A model generated the notes under the pieces. It saw nothing but the letters and a program-made list of their open reading frames with translations. It ran no database searches and had not been told where the DNA came from. From assembly GCA_964035545.1 (NCBI GenBank), contig OZ037773.1, positions 4,369,751 to 4,433,750 of the forward strand: DNA of 64,000 bases. The letters run 5' to 3'. A program made the translations under genes and the position numbers. This stretch comes from Bugula neritina. Taxonomy: Eukaryota > Animalia > Bryozoa. Shown here piece after piece: positions 49,432 to 62,514 of this stretch (positions are counted from its first letter, which is position 1; every line of letters starts with the position of its first letter).

Positions 49432-51084
49432 TGGCTTAAAATTATGTTTTAAGTTTTGAGCTATATTTTAAAATATATAATAATAATATGTTCCAGTTTA
49501 TAATGTGAGGGTTCGTAGCTTTTTAGTGGTTCACAAATCAAATGTAATTTGATACTCAAGTGCATGGTTATAAATGACTATTTTCAATTTTTCTGAAGTT
49601 TATGAGCAACAATAAAAATAATTGAATTTTGTTGTGTTATAAAACAAAGCTGTTATTTAATATGACCAAGTTACAAGGAGATAAAAATAACTATGTAATT
49701 TCAGCAGTTTTTCATATAAAATCGATCATGAAAAAATGTCAATAATTAATGTTCAACATGGTTTTGGCAGTAATAAAAAGTCATAAGCATATTTTTTTTA
49801 TTAATGTTTATTAATAATACAAAATAGGAAGTGGTGCGGATTCAAATTGATTCAATCTGAATACCAATCAATCATGAAATGTCCTTTGAGTACTTGTAAT
49901 AATAGGTTCATGAGAGCCTTTGTAGCTTTTAAATTATTTGAAATATAATTAAAAACCACTACTTCAAGTGTTTAGCATATTCTAACATGTTATAAAATAA
50001 TATGAAACTTGTTGACCCTCGTGATTTATAAGAAGATCTCTATTTAATTTCAAATAATTATTTCAAATTACTTGGTAAAACCTTGCATAAATTATTGCCA
50101 AATAGTTGTTGTTGCAGTTTTATATTTTGTAAAATATGTAATTGGGGTAATGAATATGTAAATTTACCTGATTGTATAATAACATAAAAATTATGTTTGC
50201 AACTCTTGAGTTGGTAAGTTTTTTAAGGTGCAATACCAATTATCTATTAGAGTGTCACTCCAAAATTTATTAATCGAGACAATATGTCTAACTTACTGAA
50301 AAATTATTTGTGAAAAAAGGGAAACCCTTTAAAAGAGCAGATAAGTTCAAGCATTAGCAACATAGGTTGCGCAATTGAACAGATATTAGAAGTATGTTAT
50401 GATGCCAGTGAAATGAAGTCAATTGTTTAATGTATTATATGGCACTATTTTAAAACTATTGAAACTTTTTTGGGAAAAATAGAAAAGATGGCCTGTATAG
50501 GTAGAGTTAGTTTTCCATTGAATGGGAGAGCATAACTCCGTTTACATCAGATGACAAAACAAAGAAAATACAACTTTCAGTCTAAGTCTGTTACATATTC
50601 TAGTCTGTACAGTTGCTTGCCTCCCTTGCAATGCTTTACTTGATGGTAATTATTAAACACACTCATGCAGTCTTGTGAACAAAATAGTGGATATTTTGCA
50701 GAGTTATGTTACCTTAAGAGTTGAGTTGAATCATGAAAAGTGAGACCTATAATACATATATAATACAATGGCAAGTTGATGACTGACCCATTACTCTGAG
50801 CTTTTTATTCATCAAGGGATACATATATAAAAACTTACATTCCTTTATAATATTTTAAATTGAACTTGGAGCTTTTATATGTATAAAAAGACAACTCCAA
50901 AATTCTTATCATAATATAACTTCATGTAGCTTACACTATTGGATTGAAGAGAGAGTTACCTCCCCATTTTTCTTAGCTTTTATTTTTAATGTACTAATTA
51001 CTAAAAGCATTTAAACAGAAATTACACAGGGTTAATGTTCAGCAAACCTTTCTGTAATGTTTTATTATTATGCATTTAGTAGTC

Positions 51085-52430
51085 TAATGGGGTATTGTCC
51101 ACGTTCTATCAGCAACAATCAAGTTATTATATAATTGGAAAAGCATTGCAACCAATGTAAGACTTTAACTTAAGACATTTTTAGCCATGTAATAGTTTGA
51201 GGACAAAACTAAGAGAAGTTTTACAGAATAAAATTTTGCATGCTTTATTTAAAACTTAAGACACTAGCTAGGCTAGTAAAATGCATTATAACCTTTATTG
51301 TGGAAAATAACATCGCATAATTACATGCCACATAAGACCATATTCAGAACCATAAAAGTTTCGTAATTTAAAAATGTTAAAAATTAATTAAACTGAAGCA
51401 CCGTAACCCAGAATTAGCAGTGAATATTTACTGAAGGTCGTGTTTAGGTCAATGGTTAACAGCTGATGACGCTGACTTCACTTGCCAAGATGGATGGAGC
51501 ATTTACAAGAGCTACTCGCACATTTATACAAAAGGTAGCCTCCGTCCTTGCAATACCTCTTGCATTTCCATGGATAGTTGGGGCATCCGTAGCTAGCCTC
51601 TGCTACTGAAGCTATGGAAAATTGTATAACATGGTCAGGTAACTTCAAAATGTGTGCACTGTTTTTATAGTAGTATAATTTTTGTGTATAATTATATTTT
51701 TTGCGACCACATCATCTCAATAAACAGAAATCAATTATGTGTACAAAAATAGCCTAATGGGGGTATTGACCACTGATAGATGATCATGCAGCAACAATCA
51801 AGCTATAACCTATTATAAAATGAGAAAAAGTTGCAGCTGTTAAACATTAGCTTAAACTATTTTTTAGTCATGTAAAGGTTTGGGAACAGAACTAATACTT
51901 AAAAAGATAAAAAATTTTCACAACATTAAAATTTTGCATGCTTTAATTAAAGTAAGACACTTGGCTAGCAAAGTGTATTAGTCTTTATTGCAGAAAATAA
52001 CATAGTAATTGCATGCCATATAATACTATATTCAGAACCATAGAAGTTCTATAATTTCAAAAAATCACATTTTTTCAAACTGCAGTATTTTAAGCAAGAA
52101 CTATAGCAGAATAAATATTCTATGAAGGTCATGTTGAAGTCAAGGGTTAACAGCTGATGAAGGTGATTTTAATTGCCAAGAGGGATGCGACATTTACAAG
52201 TGTTAACTACACATTTATACATAAAGTAGCCTTCGTCTCCGCAATATTGTCTGCATATCCATGGAAATTTGGGGCATCCATAGCTAGCTTCTGCTACCGA
52301 AGCTGTTAAAAGTTGCATAACATGGTGAGGTAACTCCAACATTTTTGCACTGTTTTTATGAAAATATTATTATACTTTCTGCTTAATTATAATTTATGCG
52401 ATCACATCATTTCAATAAACAAAAATCAAT
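51085..52430. repeat. ~690-bp tandem duplication carrying the defensin mature exon, its 3' splice site and 3' UTR
   Basis: ~51085-51740 aligns with ~51755-52430 (e.g. ctaatggggtattg, aaattttgcatgcttta, tattcagaaccata, ggttaacagctgatga, cacatcat.tcaataaaca). Confidence 0.88.
51478..51611 (-). CDS. Defensin-like mature-peptide exon B (second, alternative terminal exon of the 52745 gene)
   Basis: Acceptor ttttccatag|CT, then (A)SVAEA-SYGCPNYPWKCKRYCKDGGYLLYKCASSSCKCSIHLGK*. The 6-Cys CS-alpha-beta pattern is intact and it has its own AATAAA (minus strand, 51299-51294). No signal exon of its own was found. Confidence 0.85.
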
Positions 52431-52745
52431 TTATATCTGTATAAAATGTTTTTTTTTAATGATAATGATTAAAACTTAAATCTAGAAAATATTAAGTATC
52501 TATAGAAGAGTTGAAATTTTAATTAATTTAATTAATAATTTAATTGATTTTAATTAATTTAATTATTTATTTAATTGATTTTAATTAATTTAATAATAAA
52601 ATGTGTGTAATTATACTAAACATTTCGAAATTGGTAGACAAAATTCATTAAAACAGTTTCACTTGCATAATACTTAGTAAATCTTCAACTCACCTAATGC
52701 ACTGATGACAATCATGGCAATCACAAACACAGCAAGAACCTTCAT
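52169..52745 (-). CDS. CS-alpha-beta defensin-like peptide precursor (signal exon + mature exon A), 61 aa
   Basis: Exons 52745-52694 and 52302-52169. Translation: MKVLAVFVIAMIVISALASVAEA-SYGCPKFPWICRQYCGDEGYFMYKCVVNTCKCRIPLGN*. Cys spacing is C-x6-C-x3-C-x9-C-x4-C-x-C, with a phase-1 intron in the signal peptide. AATAAA at 51989-51984. Confidence 0.9.
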
Positions 52746-53503
52746 ATTAAGTTTGTTTCTATAAGTAAATCATTGGGAGACCATTTTAAAACGCAATAAG
52801 ATTAACTGTTTTAAAGTTTAAAATGACTATTGTGAGAATATGACAGATTGGTAATGATTTTTCATTTATAAAATTGCTTATAAAAAAAATATCGTTATTA
52901 TTATACTACAAGTTGCTAAGTAATTTCATTTTGCTTTCCTGAAAGTTTAATATTTCATGTGTTAAATGTTGACAAACAAACCTACATATAATACGAATTG
53001 CCGCATTAGGTTTTAAATTTTATTTTTTCAATTTGAATTATGTTATAATACCTATAATAGCATAATATACATATGGATGAAAAATACAAAAAACTCTGAT
53101 AACAAGTGCAATGATGTTTCAACTGAAGATTAATTGTGCTATATAGAAAGTAAAGCAAGTTTGGCAGGTAAAACCCTTGTTAGTTGCAGATTCCCAACAT
53201 ATCTTTTTAAAACAGACTTTTTCTTACATATTATGTGACTTTCTTCTTTAAATTAAAAAAGCAGGTGGCTGTATCAGTACCTTCTTTTTTATTTGCAAGA
53301 AAATCTGCTGTCAAACAGATTTGTGCCTTTCTTATACTTAGAGTTGAAGAGTTATATTTGCTATAACTCACATTGATCACATAATTCTATGAGAATTATA
53401 ATTTACTAATTATCAGCGATGAATAAATAAACTATTTTCAAAAATTGTTGCAACACAGTAAATTTTTTTTAATATAATATTATGTTTATATAATTAAACG
53501 TAC

Positions 53504-53680
53504 CTGTAATACTTCACCTGTGTTAAACAAAAGTCAGATATTAAACAATATTGTAGTAAAAATGCATCTCAAAGCCCTTATATACCATTTTTAGCAAATT
53601 ATTTCAATTGAAAACATCATGTTAATTTAAGTTGATTGGCTAATACATATTATCTGCAATAGATAATAGTGAGTAATTAG
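53504..53680 (-). promoter_or_regulatory. Promoter and non-coding first exon of the minus-strand defensin gene
   Basis: The minus strand reads TTAGCCAATCA, then GTATATAAGGGCTTTGAGATGCAT (TATA), then the donor TTACAG|GTACGTTTAATTA. All three are conserved with 60090-60270. Confidence 0.7.
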
Positions 53681-54117: not shown

Positions 54118-54927
<810 letters not shown>

Positions 54928-58647: not shown

Positions 58648-59811
<1,164 letters not shown>

Positions 59812-60089: not shown

Positions 60090-60255
60090 CAAATTACTCA
60101 CTATTGCTTGCAGATATGGATATTTATTAGCCAATCATCTCAAAGCTATGAGATGTTTCAAGTTTGAATATTTCGCTTGAAATAGTATATAAAGGCTTTG
60201 AGATGCATTCTTACTACAATATTGTTTACTATCTCACTTTTGTAAAGTATTACAG
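60090..60255 (+). promoter_or_regulatory. Promoter and non-coding first exon of the plus-strand defensin gene
   Basis: TTAGCCAATCA at ~60127, TATATAAAGG at ~60188, donor TACAG|GTACGT at 60255 and acceptor tttatag| at 61267. Confidence 0.7.
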
Positions 60256-61280: not shown

Positions 61281-61749
61281 ATGAAGGTCATTGCTGTGTT
61301 TGTGATTGCCATGCTAGTCATCATGGCATTGGGTAAGTAAAATGTTGATTGGGTGTTGTGTGAGCGAAAAACACAAGTTTTATATAAATATTAAAATATA
61401 ATTACAATATTATTATAACTCAAATGTCTTCAAAGTTGAAGTCTTATTCCTTCCTTTATAAATTATTTGTTTACATATTTTAATTCATTCATATTTATTG
61501 CACTGATGCGGTTGCATATAAATTAGCCTTATACAGAAAGTACAATATAATATAATATTATAAAAGCAGTGTTCAAATATTGGAGTTACCTTACCATGTT
61601 ATTAATTTTCAACAGCTTCAGTAGCGGAGGCTAGCTATGGTTGCCCCAAATATCCAAGTAAATGCAAGAAGTACTGTAAAGGAAAAGGATATTCTTCATA
61701 TAAGTGTTCTGGTTCCTCTTGTAAATGCCTCAAATATCATGGGAAGTAA
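61281..61749 (+). CDS. CS-alpha-beta defensin-like peptide precursor, 61 aa
   Basis: Exons 61281-61332 and 61616-61749. Translation: MKVIAVFVIAMLVIMALASVAEA-SYGCPKYPSKCKKYCKGKGYSSYKCSGSSCKCLKYHGK*. Same Cys spacing and exon sizes (52+134 nt) as the minus-strand gene. AATAAA at 61923. Confidence 0.92.
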
Positions 61750-62514
61750 AGTCAACTTTCTCAGCTGGTAACCTTTGACCTGGACACGACCTTCATAGAT
61801 TTTCATCCTCCTAATCCTGTCTTAAAGCTCTGTAATTTAACTAAGTTTGAATTTCTGAAATTGATATGTTTTAATGATTCTGAATATATCGTATACATGA
61901 TTATATGTAACTACTAAGTCGGAATAAAACAAATGCTTTTGAGATAGCAAAATATTTTATTTTAATTAAGCATGCAGAAGTTTTATACAACCTAAAGTAA
62001 TTATGTTTCTCATTATCATTTTTGCTCTGAAATATTTACACATTACCAATTTGTGATTTCTGTATACATGCTTTAACTAAAATACATTGAAATTATACAA
62101 ACTAGAATAATGGGGAGATAAATCTGTCTTCCATCAAGTGGTGTATACTAGATAAATTAGCTAAATGATAATAGCTTAAAGTCGTCTTTCTCTAGCATAA
62201 CCTAATCCTAGTTTAAAATATGCAGTGCAAATTTTTATGTAAGCTTAATGAATAAAAGACAATTCTAAAGTAATGCACCAGTTATTTTGATTAACTTGCT
62301 ATAGTGATTGATGTAACTGTCACTTCTCATGATTTAACTAAGAGTGGTATAATGTTCACAACTATTGTATTATCTAGCATGATAGAATGTGCTTAATATG
62401 TCAATTAATGAAGGTTTGTTCAGATCGTTTTTAGTTATTTTTTTGAAGCCATTATTACAATTACTCACTGGACACTCCATTATTGATGCTAGTAGACTCA
62501 TTATGATCAGAGGG

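What the first reader, a model, noticed from the sequence alone, without database searches (positions are those of the whole stretch)
51085..52745. One signal-peptide exon serving two tandem, intact defensin mature-peptide exons (cassette-style effector gene)
Seen: the minus-strand gene has one promoter/5'UTR exon and one signal exon (52745-52694). It is followed by two 134-nt terminal exons (52302-52169 and 51611-51478). Each has a good phase-1 acceptor, all 6 Cys, a stop codon and its own AATAAA. The ~690-bp duplication that made them excludes the signal exon, and I find no signal exon between them. The peptides differ at about half their residues (SYGCPKFPWICRQYCGDEGYFMYKCVVNTCKCRIPLGN vs SYGCPNYPWKCKRYCKDGGYLLYKCASSSCKCSIHLGK; K+R minus D+E about +3 vs +6), yet both keep the frame and cysteines. 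Inference: alternative last-exon/polyadenylation choice lets one transcription unit secrete either of two peptides, diversifying the payload behind a shared secretion leader. None of this appears in the ORF track.
Basis: partly seen in the sequence, partly recalled or inferred. Interest (0 to 1): 0.9.

Follow-up and report, generated by a model that had tools for sequence, protein, structure and literature searches.

The report
Defensin-like gene with duplicated last exon
A small secreted-peptide gene of the defensin and scorpion-toxin fold has one promoter and one signal exon but two intact tandem copies of its last exon, so it could make two peptides by alternative splicing; no RNA data were available to show that it does.

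Summary
On the minus strand there is one conserved promoter block, one signal exon (52745-52694, phase 1, GTGAGT donor), and two 134-nt terminal exons (52302-52169 and 51611-51478). Each terminal exon has a good acceptor, six Cys, a stop codon and AATAAA about 180 nt downstream. They lie in two abutting tandem units (52446-51750 and 51748-51080). A short-read contig from a public DNA run bridges the unit junction.

No second signal exon or promoter lies between the two exons. About 25 paralogues in the 264-kb cluster all pair one signal exon with one mature exon.

The peptides are cysteine-stabilised alpha/beta (defensin / K+-toxin fold) but fall below Pfam cut-offs.

The alternative-last-exon reading could not be tested, because no RNA run or transcript-derived protein is available. 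Indirect support is modest. The copies differ by 21.6% in the exon, the same as in flanking non-coding DNA (21.3%). The flanks carry 15 indels and the exons none. A neutral simulation keeps one copy intact only about 1-2% of the time.

I put about 0.5 on real dual use and about 0.3 on the distal exon being an unused relic. The principle is already known from calcitonin/CGRP, SPAG11 and tandem exon duplication.

The parts
53633..53640 (-). CCAAT-box-like motif (GCCAATCA) in the conserved promoter block
   Evidence: It is conserved between the A/B gene and the paralogue C gene upstream regions. A function as promoter is inferred.
53576..53584 (-). TATA box (TATATAAGG) of the only promoter block upstream of the A/B gene
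   Evidence: The 25-nt block around it occurs just twice in the window, at 53561-53585 (-) and 60185-60209 (+); 0 are expected by chance. See also the alignment.
53504..53552 (-). Inferred non-coding exon 1 (5'UTR). The start is approximate, about 25-30 nt after the TATA box; the exon ends at TTACAG|GTACGT.
   Evidence: The donor and exon sequence are conserved with paralogue C. No RNA evidence.
52694..52758 (-). Exon 2: acceptor ttacttatag, 13 nt of 5'UTR, then ATG at 52745. It encodes 17 aa of signal peptide plus 1 nt (phase 1) and ends with donor GTGAGT.
   Evidence: The best 8-residue hydrophobic window scores 3.55 on the Kyte-Doolittle scale.
52303..52693 (-). Intron from the signal exon to exon A (391 nt). 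Its last ~140 nt belong to duplication unit A.
51750..52446 (-). Tandem duplication unit A (697 bp): intron 3' end, exon A, 3'UTR and downstream DNA
   Evidence: blastn and MAFFT; the repeat finder families D3, D5 and D6
52169..52302 (-). Terminal exon A (134 nt including the stop): end of the signal peptide (ASVAEA) plus a 38-aa six-Cys peptide of net charge about +3
51984..51989 (-). AATAAA poly(A) signal of exon A; a second hexamer, ATTAAA, lies at 51947-51942
   Evidence: It is conserved in A, B and C.
51080..51748 (-). Tandem duplication unit B (669 bp). It abuts unit A. Beyond 51080 the homology continues only with paralogue C.
   Evidence: An X1 contig covering 51718-52013 bridges the junction.
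51478..51611 (-). Terminal exon B (134 nt including the stop): ASVAEA plus a 38-aa six-Cys peptide of net charge about +6, ending in GK like most paralogues
   Evidence: AlphaFold2 model with pLDDT 80 showing a helix and a beta-hairpin.
51294..51299 (-). AATAAA poly(A) signal of exon B; a second AATAAA lies at 51249-51244
61281..61749 (+). Neighbouring ordinary paralogue (C type): signal exon 61281-61332, 281-nt intron, mature exon 61614-61749. It is the first of about 22 near-identical copies.

Best explanation
This is a three-exon gene for a small secreted cysteine-stabilised alpha/beta (defensin-like) peptide. Its terminal exon was duplicated in tandem, about 0.7 kb, together with the last ~140 nt of the intron, the 3'UTR and the poly(A) signals.

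Shown: there is one promoter block, one 5'UTR exon and one signal exon. Both terminal copies remain complete.

Inferred: the signal-exon donor can splice either to acceptor A (391-nt intron, probably the default) or, when A's acceptor and poly(A) site are bypassed, to acceptor B (1082-nt intron). That would give two precursors with the same leader and different mature peptides. A has lost charge and the C-terminal GK. B stays close to the family ancestor.
For: - Anatomy is confirmed.
- The window holds only two promoter blocks, one for this gene and one for paralogue C.
- No family signal exon or plausible new one lies between A and B. Exon B has no in-frame ATG upstream, so it can be translated as a secreted product only through the shared signal exon.
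- The duplication is old. Non-coding divergence is 0.213 with 15 indel events in 521 nt. The exons differ by 0.216 with no indel, no stop, all six Cys kept, and acceptor and AATAAA kept in both.
- In a neutral simulation at the flank rate, one lineage stays intact with probability 0.067. Multiplied by 0.21 for no frameshift, that is about 0.014.
- dN/dS between A and B is 0.5.
- The seven leader codons at the start of both exons differ only by two synonymous changes.
- B has changed less than A since the split, 9 against 17 sites.
- Recent gene conversion cannot explain the intactness, because B differs from A at 29 and from C at 34 of 135 nt.
- A dead copy in the same cluster shows stops and lost Cys.
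Against: - There is no transcript evidence of any kind.
- Substitution rates in the exons are not lower than in the flanks.
- The lineage counts are small. B has 3 synonymous and 5 non-synonymous changes. The A-versus-B asymmetry is not significant (Fisher p = 0.16).
It also assumes that AT-rich flanks give the right indel rate for an exon.
- The proximal acceptor and poly(A) site emerge first during transcription and would be expected to win most of the time.
- None of the other ~25 paralogues uses this layout.
- No convincing RNA pairing that could loop out exon A was found.
Confidence: 0.5

Rival explanations
1. Exon B is an unused relic of a partial intragenic duplication. Transcripts splice to A and end at A's poly(A) site, and B happens to be still intact.
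For: - Partial and dead copies occur in this cluster: an orphan signal exon whose intron is interrupted after about 100 nt, and a pseudogene with stops.
- B's exon substitution rate (9 of 134) is close to its flank rate (33 of 404).
- The proximal terminal exon should be favoured kinetically (general knowledge of co-transcriptional processing).
- There is no RNA evidence for B.
Against: - Under neutrality, intactness of one copy after this much divergence has a probability of about 0.014, or 0.025-0.04 given the 9-12 changes seen.
- B has kept the acceptor, the branch-point-like CTGAC, the stop (TAA>TGA) and two AATAAA hexamers.
- B is the more conservative copy.
Confidence: 0.3
2. B is the main product and A is the fading copy. 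A is mostly skipped or contributes little, having drifted away from the family consensus.
For: - A carries 17 lineage-specific changes against 9 in B.
- Lineage dN/dS in A is about 1 (3 synonymous, 13 non-synonymous nucleotide changes).
- A has lost four Lys and the terminal GK shared by B, C and D.
Against: - With 17 random substitutions A stays intact only about 5% of the time, before indels are counted.
- A's acceptor, stop and AATAAA are intact, and it sits in the ancestral position next to the signal exon.
- The same pattern fits positive selection, which is common in this family (C versus D dN/dS about 2).
Confidence: 0.1
3. Exon B has its own unrecognised promoter and first exon, or receives a leader in trans, and is therefore a separate gene.
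For: Only that B is intact. A few ATG...GT stretches exist between A and B.
Against: - The whole A-B interval is collinear with B's and C's downstream DNA plus the intron 3' end, so nothing has been inserted.
- Neither the family signal exon nor the promoter block occurs there.
- The candidate ATG...GT stretches have poor donors and weak hydrophobicity, at most 2.2 against 3.55 for the real signal exon.
Confidence: 0.05
4. The duplication is an assembly artefact.
For: Tandem repeats are sometimes mis-assembled. An in-register joint 51622->52317 appears in one X1 contig.
Against: - The units are only 73% identical, so they cannot be collapsed or expanded by error.
- Independent de Bruijn contigs of run X1 tile the region, and one bridges the junction (51718-52013).
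- The joint has only 21 nt on its short side, in a stretch where the units differ at 1-2 positions. It is equally well explained by a small indel allele of B's intron.
Confidence: 0.02

Closest known systems
Calcitonin/CGRP (CALCA) transcription unit
   Same: One promoter and shared 5' exons that include the signal peptide. Two alternative terminal coding exons, each with its own poly(A) site, give two different secreted peptides (PMC6617714).
   Different: The CALCA terminal exons are not duplicates of each other, and their use is proven and tissue-regulated. Here the two exons are tandem paralogues and their use is unproven.
Primate SPAG11 (EP2/HE2) beta-defensin fusion gene
   Same: A host-defence peptide locus inside a defensin cluster. 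Read-through and alternative splicing put different C-terminal peptides, some defensin-like, behind a common N-terminus (PMC1524968).
   Different: SPAG11 arose by fusion of two complete beta-defensin genes and keeps two promoters. Here only the terminal exon was duplicated and there is one promoter. The fold is cysteine-stabilised alpha/beta, not beta-defensin.
Tandem exon duplication giving alternative exons
   Same: Adjacent homologous exons of equal length and phase, made by a local tandem duplication that includes flanking intron (PMC9013439).
   Different: The described cases are mostly internal, mutually exclusive exons. Here the duplicated exon is the terminal one and carries its own stop, 3'UTR and poly(A) signal.
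Invertebrate cysteine-stabilised alpha/beta defensins and scorpion K+-channel toxins (alpha-KTx, beta-KTx/scorpine)
   Same: - Six-Cys pattern C-x6-C-x3-C-x9-C-x4-C-x-C.
- Predicted helix plus beta-hairpin.
- Best structural matches are kaliotoxin, OSK1 and agitoxin (TM 0.6-0.75) and plant and insect defensins.
- Profile hits to a bivalve 'invertebrate defensin' protein and a scorpion 'putative defensin 1'.
- Weak PDB sequence hits to beta-KTx and scorpine.
   Different: - Below the Pfam gathering scores: PF14866 gives 17-21 bits against a cut-off of 27, and there is no PF01097 hit.
- No close homologue in 5.8 billion proteins.
- Activity is unknown.

Membership tests
Cysteine-stabilised alpha/beta peptide superfamily (invertebrate defensins / scorpion toxins) | Six cysteines in the pattern C...CXXXC...C...CXC | tested here: met
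   A, B, C and six more paralogues share invariant Cys at positions 10, 17, 21, 31, 36 and 38 of the exon product.
Cysteine-stabilised alpha/beta peptide superfamily (invertebrate defensins / scorpion toxins) | An alpha-helix packed on a two- or three-stranded antiparallel sheet | tested here: met
   AlphaFold2 model of B: pLDDT 79.7, helix 14-24, strands 28-32 and 35-39. Foldseek top matches are alpha-KTx toxins and defensins with TM 0.6-0.75, but E-values are not significant for so small a fold.
Cysteine-stabilised alpha/beta peptide superfamily (invertebrate defensins / scorpion toxins) | Passes a curated family model (Pfam PF01097 Defensin_2, PF14866, PF00451) | tested here: not met
   PF14866 gives E 3e-4 to 6e-3 and 17-21 bits against a cut-off of 27. 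PF01097 and PF00451 give no hit. A family profile does reach proteins that pass those models (P0002: PF14866 37.8 bits, PF01097 23.8 bits) at E about 1e-4.
Cysteine-stabilised alpha/beta peptide superfamily (invertebrate defensins / scorpion toxins) | Antimicrobial or ion-channel-blocking activity | not testable with these tools
   Needs a synthetic or recombinant peptide and assays.
Alternative-last-exon transcription unit | A single promoter and shared upstream exon(s) | tested here: met
   One conserved CCAAT/TATA/5'UTR-exon block and one signal exon lie upstream, and none lies between A and B. Promoter activity itself is inferred.
Alternative-last-exon transcription unit | Two terminal exons, each with a 3' splice site, a stop codon and a poly(A) signal | tested here: met
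Alternative-last-exon transcription unit | Transcripts that join the shared exon to each terminal exon | not testable with these tools
   No RNA run holds the locus. The only run is DNA. No transcript-derived protein is on record.
Tandem exon duplication | Adjacent homologous exons of the same length and phase within abutting duplicated units | tested here: met
   Both exons are 134 nt and phase 1. Units 52446-51750 and 51748-51080 abut and are 73% identical.

The most novel reading that the evidence does not exclude
The gene is a regulated two-payload unit. Splice and poly(A) choice, for example after infection or between tissues, would switch one promoter and leader between a weakly cationic peptide (A) and a strongly cationic, probably C-terminally amidated one (B). 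That would show terminal-exon duplication as a route by which effector clusters gain new peptides before a full gene copy exists.
Probability: 0.25. Interest if true: 0.6.

Novelty: new variant of a known kind. Interest (0 to 1): 0.38.

Why it matters
If both junctions exist, this would be a clean invertebrate example of peptide diversification by duplicating only the payload exon. It would sit midway between a single gene and a two-gene cluster. It lies next to an array of about 22 near-identical paralogues that expanded by whole-gene duplication, so two routes of expansion could be compared in one locus.

It also matters for annotation. Gene finders will report at most one of the two peptides.

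The principle itself (alternative last exons, tandem exon duplication, the SPAG11 fusion gene) is established, so the gain is one instance rather than a concept.

Tried and rejected
- **RNA evidence.** The look-up of sequencing runs returned only one run, and it is DNA. Laying it gave contigs only.
- **Transcript-derived proteins.** A word search with signal+B found nothing. That search would also have caught signal+A and the C type, so the blank means there is no transcriptome of this organism in the collection. It does not mean the gene is silent.
- **Literature.** A search for the peptide strings gave 0 papers.
- **Hidden signal exon between A and B.** Rejected.
- **Second promoter block.** Rejected.
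- **Gene conversion keeping B intact.** Rejected, because B differs from A and C by 21-25%.
- **RNA pairing that could loop out exon A.** Only AT-rich, low-complexity or weak pairs were found, the best being 24 nt at 79-83% around a CAGCTGTTAAC motif. Not convincing.
- **Rate asymmetry, A faster than B.** Not significant (p = 0.16).
- **In-register joint 51622->52317 in run X1.** It was considered as a deletion allele that would place B directly behind the signal exon. Its 21-nt short side cannot separate that from a small indel allele.
- **Flanking genome.** The cluster edge below C9:4339751 was seen only through the loci.
- **Organism.** I did not try to identify it.

Full report
**1. Observation**

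The minus strand of 50800-53400 and a scripted check confirm every sequence statement.
- ATG at 52745 opens a 52-nt coding stretch (17 codons plus 1 nt) that ends at G|GTGAGT.
- Two 134-nt exons, 52302-52169 (A) and 51611-51478 (B), follow acceptors ttttaacag and ttttccatag.
- Joined in phase 1, each yields a 61-aa precursor with six Cys and a stop codon.
- AATAAA lies 180 nt after each stop, and a second hexamer follows each.
- The mature peptides differ at 16 of 38 residues.
- One nuance: the predicted cleavage region ASVAEA|S is encoded at the start of each terminal exon. Each copy therefore carries the end of the leader.

**2. The duplication**

The repeat finder, blastn and MAFFT define two abutting units, 52446-51750 and 51748-51080, 73% identical with gaps.
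- Each unit holds the last ~140 nt of the intron, the exon, the 3'UTR and about 300 nt beyond.
- Downstream of 51080, homology continues only with paralogue C. Upstream of 52446 lies the rest of the intron and the signal exon.
- This is the footprint of a simple intragenic tandem duplication.
- Contigs of a public DNA run tile the region, and one (51718-52013) bridges the junction, so this is not an assembly artefact.
- One in-register joint (51622->52317) in that run has only 21 nt on its short side and cannot be interpreted.

**3. Gene structure and context**

- Upstream of the ATG, an acceptor (ttacttatag at 52768-52759) and a conserved block are shared with the neighbouring plus-strand paralogue (signal exon 61281-61332, mature exon 61614-61749). 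The block holds a CCAAT motif (53640-53633), a TATA box (53584-53576) and a short exon ending TTACAG|GTACGT at 53504.
- The 25-nt TATA block occurs exactly twice in the window, once per gene.
- A scan of 264 kb of the contig shows about 22 near-identical C-type genes and a few divergent ones. All pair one signal exon with one mature exon, with the two exons 240-450 nt apart. Only the A/B gene has one signal exon and two mature exons.
- The cluster also holds an orphan signal exon and a pseudogene with stops and lost Cys. Partial and dead copies therefore do occur here.

**4. Is there another way to express B?**

- tblastn at E up to 1000 finds no family signal exon between A and B.
- The five ATG...GT phase-1 stretches in that interval have poor donors and low hydrophobicity.
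- In the unspliced frame, exon B has no upstream Met.
- If B makes a secreted peptide, it must therefore use the donor at 52694.

**5. Is B maintained?**

With C as outgroup:
- A-B divergence in non-coding DNA is 0.213, with 15 indel events in 521 aligned nt. The exons differ by 0.216 with no indel.
- Lineage-specific changes in the exon are 17 for A and 9 for B. In the flanks they are 29 and 33. The difference is not significant (Fisher p = 0.16).
- dN/dS between A and B is 0.5, or 0.62 for the mature part alone.
- On the B lineage I count 3 synonymous changes, one of them TAA>TGA, and 5 non-synonymous changes.
- I simulated neutral change using the flank substitution spectrum and rate. No premature stop, six Cys and the terminal stop survive in 6.7% of runs. 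No frameshifting indel survives with probability 0.21. Together that is about 0.014 per lineage, or 0.025-0.04 given the 9-12 changes actually seen.
- Recent gene conversion cannot explain the intactness, because B differs from both A and C by 21-25%.

This is moderate evidence that B, and likewise A, has been kept as coding sequence. It is weakened by post hoc selection of the case, by small counts, and by the use of AT-rich flanks as the indel yardstick.

**6. What the peptides are**

- Pfam gives only sub-threshold hits to PF14866.
- A nine-member family profile searched against 1.84 billion representatives found four proteins at E of 2e-5 to 5e-4. Two of them carry a name. One is a two-domain 'invertebrate defensin' protein of the clam Tegillarca granosa. 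The other is 'Putative Defensin 1' of the scorpion Megacormus gertschi. The three short hits all give Pfam defensin or scorpion-toxin hits, and these two pass a gathering score.
- AlphaFold2 on B (pLDDT 80) gives a helix plus a beta-hairpin.
- The best PDB matches are kaliotoxin, OSK1 and agitoxin 2 (TM 0.6-0.75, rmsd 1.5-2.2 Å), followed by plant and insect defensins.
- PDB sequence hits are weak and go to beta-KTx and scorpine.
- The family is therefore a divergent cysteine-stabilised alpha/beta lineage. Whether it is antimicrobial or channel-blocking is open.

**7. Mechanism**

Shown: one promoter block, one signal exon, and two complete terminal exons in tandem.

Inferred: the donor at 52694 pairs by default with acceptor A, and the transcript is cleaved after 51989. 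When A's acceptor and poly(A) site are bypassed, the donor pairs with acceptor B, 691 nt further on, and the transcript ends after 51299.
- The acceptors are of similar quality. They have 11 and 12 pyrimidines in positions -20 to -3, with branch-like CTCAC and CTGAC.
- I found no convincing RNA pairing that would favour B.
- No RNA data exist for this locus, so the central claim stays untested.

My odds:

| Reading | Probability |
|---|---|
| Dual use of A and B | 0.5 |
| B is an unused relic | 0.3 |
| A is the fading copy | 0.1 |
| B has a separate first exon | 0.05 |
| Assembly artefact | 0.02 |

**8. Comparison with what is known**

- Alternative last exons that deliver different secreted peptides behind a shared leader are textbook for calcitonin/CGRP (PMC6617714).
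- Primate SPAG11 does something similar inside a beta-defensin cluster, but through fusion of two whole genes (PMC1524968).
- Tandem exon duplication is a recognised source of alternative exons, mostly internal and mutually exclusive (PMC9013439).
- The present case differs because the duplicated exon is the terminal one, with its own stop, 3'UTR and poly(A) signal. It also lies in an invertebrate peptide family of the cysteine-stabilised alpha/beta fold.
- I rate it a new variant of a known kind, of moderate interest until junction reads exist.

Noticed in passing
window 61281-61749 and onward; contig C9:4431031-4568700 (loci L003-L021, L031-L044): About 22 near-identical C-type paralogues lie in both orientations at 3-12 kb spacing, each with its own signal exon. 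This is a large, recently amplified or homogenised effector array. C-type versus D-type exons give dN/dS of about 2 (17.5 non-synonymous against 2.5 synonymous differences).
   Followed up: partly
C9:4559992-4560042, minus strand (locus L043): An orphan signal exon with an intact donor. Its intron is replaced after about 100 nt by repeat-like DNA, and no mature exon follows within 1.2 kb.
   Followed up: partly
L046:4765-4884 (-), with a signal exon at L046:5152-5202: A dead family member: two in-frame stops and lost cysteines. It shows what decay looks like in this cluster.
   Followed up: no
window 54395-54926 and 58651-59181: A perfect (TG)266 and a perfect (AC)265, each beside long (AT)n tracts, form a mirror-image pair. 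They lie between the head-to-head A/B gene and the first C gene and account for the GC-skew spikes in the composition profile.
   Followed up: partly
window 51622 / 52317: One contig of DNA run X1 joins these in-register positions of units B and A, skipping 694 nt, with only 21 nt on the short side. It could be a single-unit allele that places exon B directly behind the signal exon, or just a small indel allele of B's intron.
   Followed up: partly
window 51928-51943 and 51230-51245; C gene near 61990: AAGCATGCAAAATTTT just after the poly(A) signals is identical in A and B and nearly identical in C. It is better kept than the coding exon and may be a 3'-end processing element.
   Followed up: no
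window 52376-52431 and 51681-51736: The last ~140 nt of the intron is as well or better conserved among A, B and C than the mature-peptide coding sequence (A-B p = 0.18 against 0.22). The reason is unknown; splicing signals or an intronic regulatory element are possible.
   Followed up: no
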